Notes under the pieces: model-generated
The model's database searches: none
Told to the model about the DNA's origin: nothing
The model's input: only the letters and a program-made list of their open reading frames with translations
In this document: positions 37,975 to 42,270 of the stretch, piece after piece
How the letters are laid out: each line of letters opens with the position of its first letter
Numbering within the stretch: the stretch's first letter is position 1
Position numbers and translations under genes: made by a program
NCBI GenBank assembly: GCA_021613535.1
Contig: CP075495.1
Location: forward strand, 4,154,001-4,218,000
Length of the DNA stretch: 64,000 nt
Direction of reading: 5' to 3'
Source of the DNA: Adineta vaga
Lineage: Eukaryota > Animalia > Rotifera

Positions 37975-40228
37975 ATGCCGCAAACAATATTAATAAAAGC
38001 ACAATATTTAATTTTACTTAGTTTTTTATTAACATTTCTTGTTATAACAAATGCATTCTATACAAAAAGACAATTCTATCCATCGGTTGTCTATTTAACA
38101 AAATCGAATACAAGTCTTGGAGTAAGAAATCCTTGAATTTTCCGTAAGATAAATGAAGTTTTTCGGTAGGTTTTGTATGTTCAAGCATTTGTATTTACTG
38201 TTTTGTTTGGAAAACTTATTCAACGGATATTTCTCGGACAACTTCGTGCGATTGAAACTGAAGTTTGTAAACAAATACTATATTGTTTTCATCGATCTAT
38301 TTATGTTCTTTTTATTTCTTTTTAAGCATCTTTATGATCGTGCATGGTTTTCTATTACAGAAACATTTTTAGCATTAGCTGTATTTCGTGATGAATTCAG
38401 TTCCCATTTTATAGCTTCATTTGTAATTTTGTTATTTCTAAAATGTTTTCATTGGTTAGTAGAAGATCGTGTAGATTATGTAAGTTAAGATTATTCTCTA
38501 TTTTATACAGAAAAAAAGTAGATTCTGATTTAGATGGAACAAAGTCCTGTACTTGGTGTGACATTTCATGCACGAATTATTAGTAGGATACGAAATATCT
38601 ATGTGTTCGTAAAGGAATGTTTTTATTTCTAGGTCTTCTAAGTGTTTTATTCTTTTTGGATTATTTATTTATATCATCAGCCTATGCTTTTACATCATCG
38701 AAAGGTGCTTCTGTTCAAATCGTTTTCGGTTTTGAGGTATGAAACAAAGAAAAATTACAATATCGAGATATTGATGATTTTTTCATTGTACTATATTTCA
38801 GTATGCTATTCTACTTCTTTCGGTTATTTCTACTGGAATGAAATATATTCTTCATTTCATTGAAATTCGTACCGGTGAACAATGGGAAAACAAAGGTGTT
38901 TATATGTTGTATTCCGATTTAGTCCTTGGATTTACTCGTCTTACATTATATATGATATTTATTGTAGTCATGATGAGAATTCATACATTTCCATTATTTG
39001 CTATTCGACCCATGTTTATTGCCGTTAGGTAAATTTTCTCCACTATGAATATTCTTTCTATATTTTATCTATTAGAGCATTTCGAAAATCATGTACTGAT
39101 GTTTTGGAATCACGACGTGCTATTCAAAATTTAAATACCATGTATCCTGATTTAACAGCTGAAGAACTTGCAAATGTTACTGATACGACATGTATTATTT
39201 GTCGCGAAGAAATGCAAGTACAACAAAGTATAAAACGCCTGACTTGTCAACATGTTTTTCATAAACATTGTTTACGGTCATGGTTTCAACGACAACAAAC
39301 TTGTATGTGTTTTTTATTTCAAGAATTTTTCTTTCTTATGTCATTTATGTATTTTTCAAGGTCCAATATGCCGAACGACTGTACTACAACCTGCAACTCG
39401 TCGACCAACACGAGTCAATGCTCAACCAGCAGCAGCAGCAGCAGCACCACCACCACCGCAAGCACAGGGACAAGGACCCGTAGCCTCCAAATGGAGCTAA
39501 CTCATCGCCATCATCATCTTCTGCTTCAGCATCACCATCTAGTTCAAATATCCCTTTCAGAAATACAACTAATACCCAAATACCTCCTCCAACTACCAAT
39601 ACAATTGGTAGTGGAATCTTTTCACAAATGCCAATAGGTGGTGTGTTTCCTATGGTATTACCACCTTTTGGTAAATAAAACAAAAATTTTAGAAGAAATT
39701 ATCGTGAATGAAATATTTGTTTATTTAGCTTTTCCTCCACCACCATTACCGCCAGCAAATTTTACGGGTATGTCGGAAGAAAGCATTCGGGCAATGGAAG
39801 GAACTGAATTAGCTCATGTTCAAGCACGTATACAGTGTTTACGTAATGTTAGAATACTATTAGATGCATCCATGATACAAATGCAACAATACATGAATAT
39901 TGTATCAACACAAAGGTTTGTTTTTCTTTCTAAAAATCTTTTCTTTGGAGCAGAATTTATCTGTATTTTTTAATAGTAATATGGATAATGGTACTCGTTT
40001 ATTAAGTAATCTTAGTACTGATCTCGATCGAACGTTTCCATCATCCAATCAATCCAATACAACCGCCTAGTAAAGTGTTGCTTATATTTCTATCTATTGA
40101 ATTTTAATAACACTGACTATTTAGATGCCAATGAAAATGATGCTGATAAGATACACTGCCACTTATTAGACTATTATGAAAAAAGGTTATCTCCAAACAG
40201 TAGTGATCAAATTCACAACGAGAGTTAA
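37975..40228 (+). CDS. SYVN1: ERAD E3 ligase HRD1/synoviolin; frameshift at about 39483; 3' end uncertain (stop at 40070 or 40228)
   Basis: QFYPSVVYLTKS, AWFSITETFLALAVFRDEF, KCFHWLVEDRVDY, WENKGVY, RING-H2 [56 protein letters not shown]. Confidence 0.93.
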
Positions 40229-40470
40229 ATAGATATTTATTCATATTCATATTCTAAACAGTGTCCTCTATTCACTTCTACTTAAACCTTTTCTTCTTTC
40301 TCGTTAAACCCTTTGTTCATTGTATATATACATATACGAACAAAAATGTTTCTAAAATAAAATATGAATGAAGCAACTCATCTTTATTGTACAAAGAAGT
40401 ATATACATATATTTATCACTGTTAAATGATACCTGACAGAAAAAATACAAGATATTCTATTGTTAGTAAT

Positions 40471-41886
40471 TCAAAATTGTTGTTCATGAGCTTCAAATGG
40501 TTGTAAAGCAAATTGAACAATTGATTCAATGATCCATTCAGGATCAAGAAAATATACACCATTTGAACGAGATAATTCAAATAGTTGTTGTTGATTTGTT
40601 GAAACAAATGGACAGAATTCATCACAAAGTACAATGGTTAATATTGAATGATCACTGACTGTCGTTAAAGGAAATGTGTCGAGACTAGAACCATGACATA
40701 ATTGTATCAATGAAATTAATTCAGTTTTAGACTAAAAATAGATCAATAGTTTTCCTTGATATCAAATAAGCGAACATGAACTTACCATTTTATCTTGACA
40801 ACCATCACATAAAATAAAAAATTGACAATTTTGAAATAATTTAACTTGTTTTGCTAATCGACTCTTTCTCATTCCATCATGATATTCTCCAAAAGGGATA
40901 TCACCACGTATTTCATAATTCATTTCATTAACAATTTGATTTTGTTTTAAACATTCATTAATCCATTCATAACTAAGAACATATAAATGACGAGCAATGG
41001 CTTGAAATAATTTCATAGTTAATGGACATAATAATGGTTGTTCTTCATTTCCAATAATCAAATGCGTTGTTGAATCATCAACTTGTTCAGATAATGTCAT
41101 TTGATCAGAATAATTGCTTACGAATTGACGAAGATTCATCTAGAAAGAATGCAAAGAGAAATGTTTTATCAAATGTTTCTCTTAGACTTTTTTTTACATA
41201 CAATTTGTGCATTATTTAAACAAGAATATGCAATAATAATTTCCTTATCAGTCAGATCTATTACTTCGATTGTTTCCTCGTCTGATGAAAATGATAAACC
41301 AAGTATTCTCTTCAAATCGTGTAAATCATCTTCTTCGTTTTGTTTTTGTCTTTTTCCATTAATTTTCACGGGTAATTTATGTTCTTTACGCATTTTTACA
41401 CGAGCATTCGTAAACCAGATAGTGATTTGTGCTGAAGTCATTTTAGTCTTTTTCATTAAAATTTGTTTCTCGTTTTCAGTTGGATCTAAATGTCAAAATC
41501 AAATATATTAATAGAAGAAAAAGTGAGCTACAAAACATACATGGATGATTTTGATGTTCATACAGCCATTGTTTTAAAGGACCTGTAGAATTACGTTCAC
41601 GACCAGTTGTATTAAATAATGTTGATAATTTACAATTTTCTTTAACATTATCTGTCTCCATTGTTGATGTAACTCGATTATCATTGCTACTTGATTCCGT
41701 ACATTTTGTTTCCTTCCCAATTGAATCTGTTTTTCTCAGAATTTTTATGCCCGTTAAGTCATTTTGATCCGTCATTTCACAAGATTGTTGATTGAGCATA
41801 TCGATTAATGATGAACCAGATGATAATACAGAGATATTTATAAATGAATTATTCGATGTTGATAGATCAGAATATTCTGATAGCAT
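40471..41886 (-). CDS. TALE (Iroquois/Mohawk-like) homeodomain fused to BRCA1-type tandem BRCT repeats, 414 aa, 4 exons
   Basis: Exons 41886-41541, 41485-41202, 41139-40786 and 40731-40471 join in frame (1245 nt). PLKQWLYEHQNHPYPTENEK...WFTNAR; THLII...TMKLFQAIA..VLSYEWI..YEIRGD; WIIESI. Confidence 0.88.
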
Positions 41887-41946
41887 TTTCTTACGAATTA
41901 AAATGTTGATTTCGAATGAATAAGATATCCTAAATTTGCTAGACAA

Positions 41947-41964
41947 TATATATATATATATATA
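41947..41964. repeat. (TA)n microsatellite
   Basis: Read directly from the sequence. Confidence 0.8.
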
Positions 41965-41994
41965 ACATCGACTGATGCATCTGACTCAGATATA

Positions 41995-42270
41995 CACTGT
42001 TCAATACAACAATGAAATGCCGACCGTAGTGAAAACGGCGGTCACCGGCAGATATCATCGACGGGCATTATCAAAGATTAGCAATTTCAGAAGAAGAGTA
42101 GCACGGACGGGTCATGACCGTCAGGATAATCATAGCATAACCTGTAAATGAGATTTGTCTTGCTAGGACTATGATTTGTATCAATCATCTCTATTCATAG
42201 AATCCTTTATGCATAAGAAGAATTACTTCTTATCGTATTTAAATGTTGTATGTTGAAATCAGTGGTTTTT
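41995..42270. other. GC-enriched structured element (candidate ncRNA or MITE-like relic)
   Basis: Imperfect terminal inverted repeat 41995-42011/42244-42264 enclosing four hairpins, followed by a T5 run on the + strand. Confidence 0.45.

What the first reader, a model, noticed from the sequence alone, without database searches (positions are those of the whole stretch)
40471..41886. TALE homeodomain fused to BRCA1-type tandem BRCT repeats: candidate phosphorylation-sensing DNA-damage transcription factor
Seen: four exons with canonical GT-AG sites splice to an uninterrupted 414-aa protein. It has a Ser-rich N-terminus, a TALE homeodomain (PLKQWLYEHQNHPYPTENEKQILMKKTKMTSAQITIWFTNARVKMRKE, closest to Iroquois/Mohawk), a short linker and two BRCT repeats. 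Knowledge: the repeats follow BRCA1 specifically (THLII..C..TMKLFQAIA...VLSYEWI...YEIRGD...G...H.G...R; terminal WIIESI). Equivalents of BRCA1 S1655 (IAYSCL), T1700/K1702 and F1704 (TMKLF) and M1775 (DKMSKTEL) appear kept, while R1699 is Leu. There is no RING. I know of no characterised homeodomain-BRCT protein. Inference: domain shuffling coupled a pSer-X-X-Phe reader to sequence-specific DNA binding, which could matter in a desiccation- and radiation-tolerant animal.
Basis: partly seen in the sequence, partly recalled or inferred. Interest (0 to 1): 0.92.

Follow-up and report, generated by a model that had tools for sequence, protein, structure and literature searches.

The report
Homeodomain fused to BRCA1-type BRCT repeats
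This is a real, conserved gene of bdelloid rotifers that joins a DNA-binding homeodomain to the phosphoprotein-binding end of the breast-cancer protein BRCA1, a combination not described in the literature I searched and whose function is untested.

Summary
Four minus-strand exons with GT-AG introns of 55, 62 and 54 nt give a 414-aa protein. It is identical to GenBank 'hypothetical protein I4U23_007089 [Adineta vaga]'.

Pfam finds a TALE homeodomain (Homeobox_KN) and BRCT repeats. Solved-structure searches put the repeats with BRCA1 (E 3e-21) far ahead of BARD1 (1e-5). The BRCA1 phosphoserine residues are kept (S203, T251, K253), as are F255 and M328. R1699 is an invariant Leu and G1656 an invariant Cys.

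The architecture is not a model artefact:
- The chromosome-5 ohnologue has it.
- A longer paralogue family has it.
- Adineta, Rotaria and Didymodactylos orthologues have it.
- Two intron-less, transcript-like public contigs encode the whole fusion in one frame.

No RNA evidence was obtained for this copy itself. Every homeodomain-BRCT protein found with a named source is bdelloid. No paper describes the architecture; one supplementary table files two such genes as 'BRCA1', expressed but unchanged after irradiation or desiccation.

The most likely role is a transcription factor whose BRCT pair docks phosphoproteins. The pSer-x-x-Phe specificity and the DNA-damage role are unproven.

This scan also noted the same family at three other places in this genome.

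The parts
41541..41886 (-). Exon 1 (codons 1-115 plus the first base of codon 116). Holds the disordered Ser/Thr/Asn-rich N-terminus, the conserved KLSTLF motif, and the homeodomain N-terminal arm and helix 1.
   Evidence: The start codon and N-terminus are shared with orthologues P0157, P0159 and P0160.
41614..41625 (-). Codons 88-91, S-T-L-F. This is an S-x-x-F motif, invariant in all short-form family members, four residues before the homeodomain.
   Evidence: Searches show the conservation. Any role as a BRCT ligand is inference only; complex prediction gave no answer.
41373..41613 (-). TALE homeodomain, residues about 92-153, split by intron 1. Helices lie at 102-110, 119-129 and 133-149. 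W139, F140, N142 and R144 are invariant.
   Evidence: Homeobox_KN scores 36.3 bits on exon 2 alone. The best solved matches are PKNOX1, TGIF1, MEIS and PBX1, aligned without gaps. Model pLDDT is 70-84.
41486..41540 (-). Intron 1, 55 nt, GTATGT...TTTAG, phase 1, inside the homeodomain.
   Evidence: The intron-less contig L010 aligns to the window on both sides of exactly this gap.
41202..41485 (-). Exon 2. In one open frame it holds homeodomain helices 2-3, a basic stretch (KINGKRQKQ), an acidic Ser-rich linker and the first strand of BRCT1 (IIIAYSCL, with S203).
41140..41201 (-). Intron 2, 62 nt, GTATGT...TCTAG, phase 0.
40786..41139 (-). Exon 3. Holds the rest of BRCT1 (TTHLI, CPLTMKLF with T251, K253 and F255), the inter-repeat linker (YEIRGD...HDGMRKSRL) and the start of BRCT2 with M328.
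   Evidence: BRCT scores 35.8 bits.
40732..40785 (-). Intron 3, 54 nt, GTAAGT...TTTAG, phase 0.
40471..40731 (-). Exon 4. Holds the remainder of BRCT2 (PEWIIESIVQF) and the TGA stop at 40473-40471.
   Evidence: BRCT_2 scores 20.5 bits on this exon alone and 58 bits in the whole orthologue.
40501..41243 (-). Tandem BRCT module, residues about 197-405, including introns 2 and 3.
   Evidence: phmmer against PDB gives BRCA1 at 3e-21 and BARD1 at 1e-5. The top 28 Foldseek matches are BRCA1 BRCT, E 7e-15, TM 0.61. Model pLDDT is 70-90.
40383..40388 (-). AATAAA, about 85 nt after the stop codon. Likely polyadenylation signal.
   Evidence: Read directly from the sequence. This is inference with no read support.

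Best explanation
The locus is an intact, selectively maintained gene found so far only in bdelloid rotifers (Adineta vaga I4U23_007089). Its product has four parts in order: a disordered N-terminus, a TALE homeodomain, a basic and acidic linker, and a BRCA1-type tandem BRCT at the C-terminus.

Proposed mechanism. The homeodomain places the protein on specific DNA sites. The BRCT pair, tethered there, docks a phosphoserine-bearing partner. It would then act as the effector or co-factor-recruiting domain of a transcription factor.

Shown: the gene structure, both domains, their conservation, the BRCA1 affinity, and retention of the phosphate-contacting residues.

Inferred: DNA binding, phosphopeptide binding, the identity of the partner (RNA polymerase II CTD and checkpoint-kinase substrates are candidates), and any link to DNA damage or desiccation.
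For: Gene and domains:
- The model equals the GenBank record.
- Homeobox_KN and BRCT score above Pfam cut-offs even on single exons.
- The whole orthologue scores 64, 57 and 58 bits.
- Exon 2 alone carries homeodomain helix 3 and BRCT strand 1 in one frame.

Conservation:
- The ohnologue on chromosome 5 has the same architecture. Chromosomes 2 and 5 are homoeologous (PMC8494291).
- A long-form paralogue lies at C2:7.21 Mb.
- Orthologues exist in three Adineta species, at least five Rotaria and Didymodactylos.
- In the tree, the C2-type and C5-type clades each hold both Adineta and Rotaria.
- The homeodomain is 69-92 % and the BRCT repeats 38-75 % identical among short forms, against 8-37 % for the N-terminus.

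Transcript-like evidence in relatives:
- Contigs L009 and L010 encode the entire fusion without introns.
- L010 aligns to the window on both sides of exactly intron 1.

BRCT function:
- BRCA1 is by far the best solved match, over both repeats.
- S/T203, T/S251, K253 and M328 are conserved in all 15 aligned sequences.

Precedent:
- BRCA1 BRCT repeats tethered to DNA unfold chromatin and belong to its transactivation domain (PMC2150890).
- A solved BRCA1 BRCT complex with a Pol II pSer5-CTD peptide exists (9qpx).
Against: - No RNA read or junction was obtained for this copy. The runs laid were DNA-like contigs, colinear through the introns.
- The homologue of R1699 is Leu and that of G1656 is Cys throughout the family, so phosphopeptide binding or its specificity may differ from BRCA1.
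- The model's confidence is below 50 for residues 242-253, which include T251 and K253.
- Homeodomain position 54 is Val, where the solved TALE domains aligned (PKNOX1, TGIF1) have Arg. DNA specificity is therefore unknown.
- This ohnologue evolves faster than its chromosome-5 partner.
- Allelic differences in the 2013 read contigs are 13 synonymous to 9 non-synonymous, only weak evidence of constraint.
Confidence: 0.55

Rival explanations
1. DNA-repair scaffold rather than transcription factor. The family would be what bdelloids use in place of, or beside, canonical BRCA1. The BRCT pair would bind phosphorylated repair factors of the CtIP, Abraxas or FANCJ type, and the homeodomain would serve as a general DNA or chromatin tether.
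For: - The BRCT pair is nearest to BRCA1.
- No BRCA1-like RING lies near any of the 18 BRCT loci in this genome.
- Moris et al. file homeobox-bearing genes under 'BRCA1', homologous recombination.
Against: - The homeodomain keeps the base-contacting N142 and is the best-conserved part of the protein, which suits specific DNA binding.
- There is no RING and no coiled coil.
- The filed genes do not respond to irradiation or desiccation at RNA level.
- The RING search was generic, so absence of canonical BRCA1 is not shown.
Confidence: 0.15
2. Self-regulated phospho-switch. The invariant S88-T-L-F91 just before the homeodomain would, once phosphorylated, be bound by the protein's own BRCT pair. 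Binding could be in cis or head-to-tail between molecules, and would mask or reshape DNA binding.
For: - The S-x-x-F motif is invariant in all short forms of both ohnologue types, while the sequence upstream of it is not conserved.
- The hydrophobic +3 pocket residues F255 and M328 are kept.
Against: - The motif may simply be an extension of the homeodomain arm.
- The long forms lack it.
- The R1699 equivalent is Leu.
- Complex prediction gave no answer, score 0.02, which counts neither for nor against.
Confidence: 0.12
3. The BRCT pair is a phosphorylation-independent interaction or nucleic-acid-binding module, and the phosphoserine pocket is vestigial.
For: - G1656 is Cys and R1699 is Leu in all members.
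- The model's confidence is low around the T251/K253 loop.
Against: The Ser/Thr, Thr/Ser and Lys triad is conserved across short and long forms, which otherwise share only about 36-51 % identity in the repeats.
Confidence: 0.13
4. Annotation artefact or decaying gene. Either two neighbouring genes were merged by prediction, or this is a pseudogene copy.
For: There are no RNA reads for this copy. It is the faster-evolving ohnologue.
Against: - One exon spans both domains.
- The frame is intact and the splice sites canonical.
- The same architecture recurs in at least nine named bdelloid species, in paralogues and in intron-less contigs.
Confidence: 0.03

Closest known systems
BRCA1 C-terminal tandem BRCT (human and rat; PDB 1jnx, 1l0b, 1t2v, 4u4a, 9qpx)
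   Same: Both BRCT repeats align end to end: E 3e-21 by sequence, and the top 28 Foldseek hits. S1655, T1700, K1702, F1704 and M1775 are kept. In BRCA1, DNA-tethered BRCT repeats unfold chromatin and form part of the transactivation domain (PMC2150890).
   Different: There is no RING and no long central region, and the protein is 414 aa against about 1800. R1699 is Leu and G1656 is Cys. The module sits behind a homeodomain. This is not a BRCA1 orthologue.
TALE-class homeodomain proteins (PKNOX1, TGIF1, MEIS1/2, PBX1; possibly Iroquois/Mohawk)
   Same: Homeobox_KN scores above its cut-off. There is a gap-free alignment over 50 positions to PKNOX1 and TGIF1, including the three-residue loop extension. 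WF-N-R is present in helix 3.
   Different: None of the companion domains of these classes was found by Pfam. Position 54 is Val, where aligned PKNOX1 and TGIF1 have Arg. No known TALE protein carries BRCT repeats.
MEIS2 with PARP1 (a TALE homeodomain protein binding a BRCT domain in trans)
   Same: A TALE factor brings a BRCT-bearing protein to a promoter. MEIS2 binds the BRCT domain of PARP1 in pull-downs (PMC5584172).
   Different: There the two domains are on separate proteins, and the BRCT is a single PARP1-type domain. Here a BRCA1-type pair is fused in cis.
Other bdelloid BRCA1-type BRCT proteins (for example P0008 with Alba, P0022 named C2H2-type, P0009, P0011)
   Same: They belong to the same bdelloid BRCT clade (SH-aLRT 97, 70 rows), and the BRCT pair is C-terminal.
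   Different: Their N-terminal parts are different or unrecognised. Only the short clade (SH-aLRT 100) and the long clade (SH-aLRT 98) carry the homeodomain.

Membership tests
TALE-class homeodomain | Match to Pfam Homeobox_KN (PF05920) above the gathering score | tested here: met
   36.3 bits against a cut-off of 24 on exon 2 alone. 64.4 bits in orthologue P0001.
TALE-class homeodomain | Three-residue extension between helices 1 and 2 (63-residue domain) | tested here: met
   Gap-free alignment of residues 98-147 to the PKNOX1 and TGIF1 homeodomains. All of the top 20 solved matches but one (an engrailed chimera) are TALE proteins.
TALE-class homeodomain | Helix 3 with W48, F49, N51 and R53 | tested here: met
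   W139, F140, N142 and R144 are invariant in 15 sequences.
Iroquois / Mohawk subclass | Groups with Irx or Mkx homeodomains in a tree with curated references | not testable with these tools
   No Irx or Mkx sequence could be fetched. The region search returned only the family itself. The Atlas gave only generic Homeobox_KN clusters at 0.79 or less.
BRCA1-type tandem BRCT | Two consecutive BRCT repeats | tested here: met
   BRCT scores 35.8 bits on exon 3, and BRCT_2 scores 20.5 bits on exon 4, below its cut-off. Whole orthologue: BRCT 57 bits in two stretches, BRCT_2 58 bits. The model shows two beta-alpha repeats at 198-285 and 315-401.
BRCA1-type tandem BRCT | Closer to BRCA1 than to other tandem BRCTs | tested here: met
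   BRCA1 at 3e-21 to 4e-18 against BARD1 at 1e-5. Foldseek ranks 1-28 are BRCA1. More than 60 of the 150 best representatives carry an N-terminal RING, and the named ones are vertebrate BRCA1.
BRCA1-type tandem BRCT | Phosphoserine pocket S1655, T1700, K1702 | tested here: met
   S203, T251 and K253 by alignment. The three positions read S/T, T/S and K in all 15 family sequences. G1656 is Cys.
BRCA1-type tandem BRCT | +3 Phe read-out: R1699, F1704, M1775 | tested here: inconclusive
   F255 and M328 are kept. R1699 is an invariant Leu.
BRCA1-type tandem BRCT | Binds pSer-x-x-Phe peptides | not testable with these tools
   This needs a binding assay. The complex prediction gave no answer.
BRCA1 orthologue (KEGG K10605) | N-terminal RING that pairs with BARD1 | tested here: not met
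   No RING by Pfam on any exon or by pattern in P0158. None of the 70 rows in the bdelloid BRCT clade is RING-labelled.

The most novel reading that the evidence does not exclude
Bdelloid rotifers turned the BRCA1 phosphopeptide-reading module into a lineage-specific toolkit. It was duplicated many times and bolted onto sequence-specific nucleic-acid binders (TALE homeodomain, zinc fingers, Alba), possibly in the absence of a canonical RING-BRCA1. Checkpoint-kinase signalling would then be wired directly to defined genomic sites. In the short homeodomain form, the protein's own invariant S-x-x-F motif would act as a phosphorylation-controlled latch on DNA binding.
Probability: 0.12. Interest if true: 0.85.

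Novelty: new variant of a known kind. Interest (0 to 1): 0.6.

Why it matters
Both domains are textbook, but I found no description of their fusion. My searches found it only in bdelloid rotifers, animals known for repairing shattered genomes.

In effect it is a natural version of the laboratory 'DNA-binding domain plus BRCA1 C-terminus' reporter construct. It offers a small, tractable system to ask two questions: what a BRCA1-type BRCT pair does when parked at specific DNA sites, and which phosphoproteins it reads when R1699 is replaced.

It also corrects an annotation habit. Members of this family are being counted as 'BRCA1' in bdelloid DNA-repair inventories although they lack the RING.

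The wider expansion of BRCA1-type BRCT genes in bdelloids deserves a dedicated study.

Tried and rejected
- Reads. The only holders of the stretch were 2013 runs whose contigs run straight through the introns, so they are DNA-like. One 249-nt contig of another organism, guessed as RNA, also includes 31 nt of intron 1. There were no joints. This is neither support for nor evidence against expression of this copy.
- Complex prediction of the BRCT pair with residues 72-103. No answer, score 0.02. Not evidence either way.
- Homeodomain subclass. The region search returned only the family itself. The Atlas gave only generic hits for the homeodomain and nothing for the whole protein. Iroquois/Mohawk is left untested.
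- Mapping the window gene to the FUN identifiers of Moris et al. 2024. FUN_007089 and FUN_026206 are absent from the held, truncated tables. I therefore cannot say whether FUN_020908 or FUN_007433 is this gene, its ohnologue or the long form.
- Search for a canonical BRCA1 RING in the genome. There were 62 generic RING matches, the best at 2e-8, none next to a BRCT locus. Inconclusive.
- Allelic synonymous to non-synonymous count, 13 to 9. Too few sites to weigh.
- Merged-gene artefact. Rejected; see the rival explanations.
- Joined model. The joined exon model was not typed or sent to any search tool. Searches used single exons by reference, and the identical public record P0158 by its id. 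The exons were joined only inside a local script, to check length, frame and identity.

Full report
**What is there.** On the minus strand of the window, four exons are joined by GT-AG introns of 55, 62 and 54 nt: 41886-41541, 41485-41202, 41139-40786 and 40731-40471. The donors are GTATGT, GTATGT and GTAAGT. The acceptors follow pyrimidine-rich tracts and end in TAG. The frame is open for 414 codons. The genome is a 100.8-Mb, six-contig assembly, and the window is C2:4154001-4218000. A protein search returned 'hypothetical protein I4U23_007089 [Adineta vaga]' (P0158, UJR25739.1), and a script showed it is identical to the conceptual splice. That annotation was made with funannotate, PASA and RNA-seq input (PMC8494291). 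This fits the model but does not prove it.

The joined model was never typed or sent to a search tool. Where a full-length query was needed, I used the public record P0158 or its orthologues by id.

**Domains.** Exon by exon, Pfam gives Homeobox_KN at 36.3 bits (cut-off 24) and Homeodomain at 29.1 bits on exon 2. It gives BRCT at 35.8 bits (cut-off 21.3) on exon 3, and a sub-threshold BRCT_2 at 20.5 bits on exon 4. In the full-length orthologue P0001 the scores are 64, 57 and 58 bits.

Against solved structures, the homeodomain matches almost only TALE proteins at the top: PKNOX1 at 2e-11, then TGIF1, MEIS1/2 and PBX1. The alignment has no gaps through the loop that defines the class. The BRCT region aligns over both repeats to rat and human BRCA1 (3e-21 and 5e-19), against 1e-5 for BARD1.

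An AlphaFold model built on a 15-sequence family alignment has a three-helix homeodomain (pLDDT 70-84) and two BRCT repeats (70-90). The N-terminus (1-98) and linker (153-195) are disordered. Its 28 best Foldseek matches are BRCA1 BRCT structures, followed by BARD1 and MCPH1.

- S203 = S1655
- T251 = T1700
- K253 = K1702
- F255 = F1704
- M328 = M1775
- L250 = R1699
- C204 = G1656 (an additional change)

No RING was found.

**Is the fusion real?** Several independent lines say yes.
- Exon 2 alone holds homeodomain helices 2-3 and the first BRCT strand in one open frame.
- The chromosome-5 ohnologue (I4U23_026206, P0192; locus L002) has the same order of domains, with two extra introns. Chromosomes 2 and 5 are homoeologous.
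- A longer paralogue at C2:7.21 Mb (L007) also has a TALE homeodomain ahead of BRCA1-type repeats. It matches the 828- and 952-aa proteins of Didymodactylos carnosus and the 733-aa proteins of Rotaria.
- Full-length orthologues carrying both Pfam domains exist in A. steineri, A. ricciae, R. sordida, two Rotaria 'Silwood' isolates and D. carnosus.
- Two short public contigs encode the entire fusion in a single uninterrupted frame with short flanks: L009 from a Logan assembly (1348 nt) and L010 from a JGI sample (1426 nt). L010 aligns to the window on both sides of exactly intron 1, with the 55 nt missing, and it carries AATAAA near its end. These behave like spliced mRNAs of relatives. I could not check the library type.

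For the window copy itself I obtained no RNA evidence. The runs that hold it are DNA-like, colinear through the introns and without joints.

**Conservation.** Among short forms, the homeodomain is 69-92 % identical to this protein, BRCT1 52-75 %, the inter-repeat linker 54-95 % and BRCT2 38-75 %. The N-terminus is only 8-37 % and the inter-domain linker 20-67 %. The base-contacting and phosphate-contacting residues are invariant or conservatively swapped (S/T, T/S) in all 15 aligned sequences.

A maximum-likelihood tree of BRCT pairs gives these groupings:
- All bdelloid proteins fall in one clade (SH-aLRT 97, 70 rows), beside RING-bearing proteins whose named members are vertebrate BRCA1.
- The short homeodomain forms are one clade (SH-aLRT 100). 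D. carnosus branches first, then a C2-type and a C5-type clade, each holding both Adineta and Rotaria.
- The duplication therefore predates the split of those genera.
- The long forms are a separate clade (SH-aLRT 98). The backbone between the two is weak, so one or two fusion events remain possible.

This gene belongs to the faster-evolving C2 type.

**Range and prior knowledge.** An exhaustive HMMER search of 1.84 billion representatives with exon 3 found 426 hits. Among the best 150, only bdelloid proteins have a homeodomain. A profile search with the family alignment found Homeobox_KN plus BRCT only in bdelloid proteins or in unnamed environmental ones.

Full-text searches found no paper on a homeodomain-BRCT protein. 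The DNA-repair survey of bdelloids does not mention BRCA1. Table S8 of Moris et al. 2024 lists FUN_020908 (BRCT, Homeobox KN, BRCT_2) and FUN_007433 (Homeobox KN) as 'BRCA1', K10605, under homologous recombination. Their mean counts are 245 and 316, with no significant change after desiccation, X-rays or Fe ions. Their best outside hits were bird and insect BRCA1, not Brachionus, which hints that monogononts lack a close relative. I could not map these identifiers to this locus.

This scan's own notes record the same family at three other places in this genome. One of them lies at the position of the long-form locus L007.

**How it most likely works.** Shown: a nuclear-type DNA-binding domain and a BRCA1-type BRCT pair on one conserved polypeptide, with the phosphate-binding triad kept.

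Inferred: the homeodomain targets specific sites, and the BRCT pair docks a phosphorylated partner there. Two precedents fit. BRCA1 BRCT repeats tethered to a lac-operator array unfold chromatin and belong to BRCA1's transactivation domain (PMC2150890). The structure library also holds BRCA1 BRCT bound to a Pol II pSer5-CTD peptide (9qpx).

The invariant Leu at the R1699 position and the Cys at G1656 argue that the +3 read-out may differ from BRCA1. I therefore do not endorse pSer-x-x-Phe specificity.

One new observation bears on the mechanism. All short forms carry an invariant (K/R)LS(T/S)LF, an S-x-x-F motif, four residues before the homeodomain. It could be an in-cis ligand and a phospho-switch. 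The complex prediction gave no answer.

A DNA-repair scaffold role is a live rival. A role in the damage response is not supported by any data I could reach.

**Verdict.** This is a new variant of known kinds: an undescribed domain architecture found so far only in bdelloids. It is present in databases as unnamed proteins and is sometimes mislabelled BRCA1. Interest is moderate to high, pending transcript confirmation for this copy and any biochemical test.

Noticed in passing
Genome-wide, e.g. L003 (C6:12279340), L004 (C1:2802935), L005 (C4:11598675), L006 (C2:4684886), L008 (C4:11975454): At least 18 six-frame matches to the BRCA1-type BRCT exon in A. vaga. Bdelloid BRCT proteins form one clade of 70 rows. 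Varied N-terminal partners are seen: Alba in P0008, and 'C2H2-type' by UniRef name in P0022. This looks like a lineage-specific expansion of the BRCA1 BRCT module.
   Followed up: partly
Genome-wide: No BRCA1-like RING match lies within about 20 kb of any BRCT locus, so a canonical RING-plus-BRCT BRCA1 is not evident in this assembly. The RING search was generic, so this remains open.
   Followed up: partly
L007 = G000:C2:7214094-7217336: A long-form homeodomain-BRCT gene (orthologue of D. carnosus P0006/P0166), with a second BRCT gene directly downstream (match at C2:7217380-7217634). An earlier scan note reads Cys3His repeats in its N-terminus. I did not test that.
   Followed up: partly
window 41614-41625 (minus strand): An invariant S-x-x-F motif (KLSTLF) directly before the homeodomain in all short-form family members. 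It is absent from the long forms.
   Followed up: partly
window 41938-41972: A (TA)n microsatellite about 50 nt upstream of the start codon. Read contigs break there.
   Followed up: no
Moris et al. 2024 (PMC10809525), Table S8: Homeobox-bearing genes FUN_020908 and FUN_007433 are filed as BRCA1 (K10605). The listed 'BARD1' (FUN_018514) carries RRM and ankyrin domains only. The homologous-recombination inventory of A. vaga may need revision.
   Followed up: no
window 40200-42200, runs X2, X4, X5: About 40 single-base differences and four one-base insertions between the window and the 2013 read contigs. Within the CDS there are 13 synonymous and 9 non-synonymous differences. They are probably allelic or strain differences.
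   Followed up: partly
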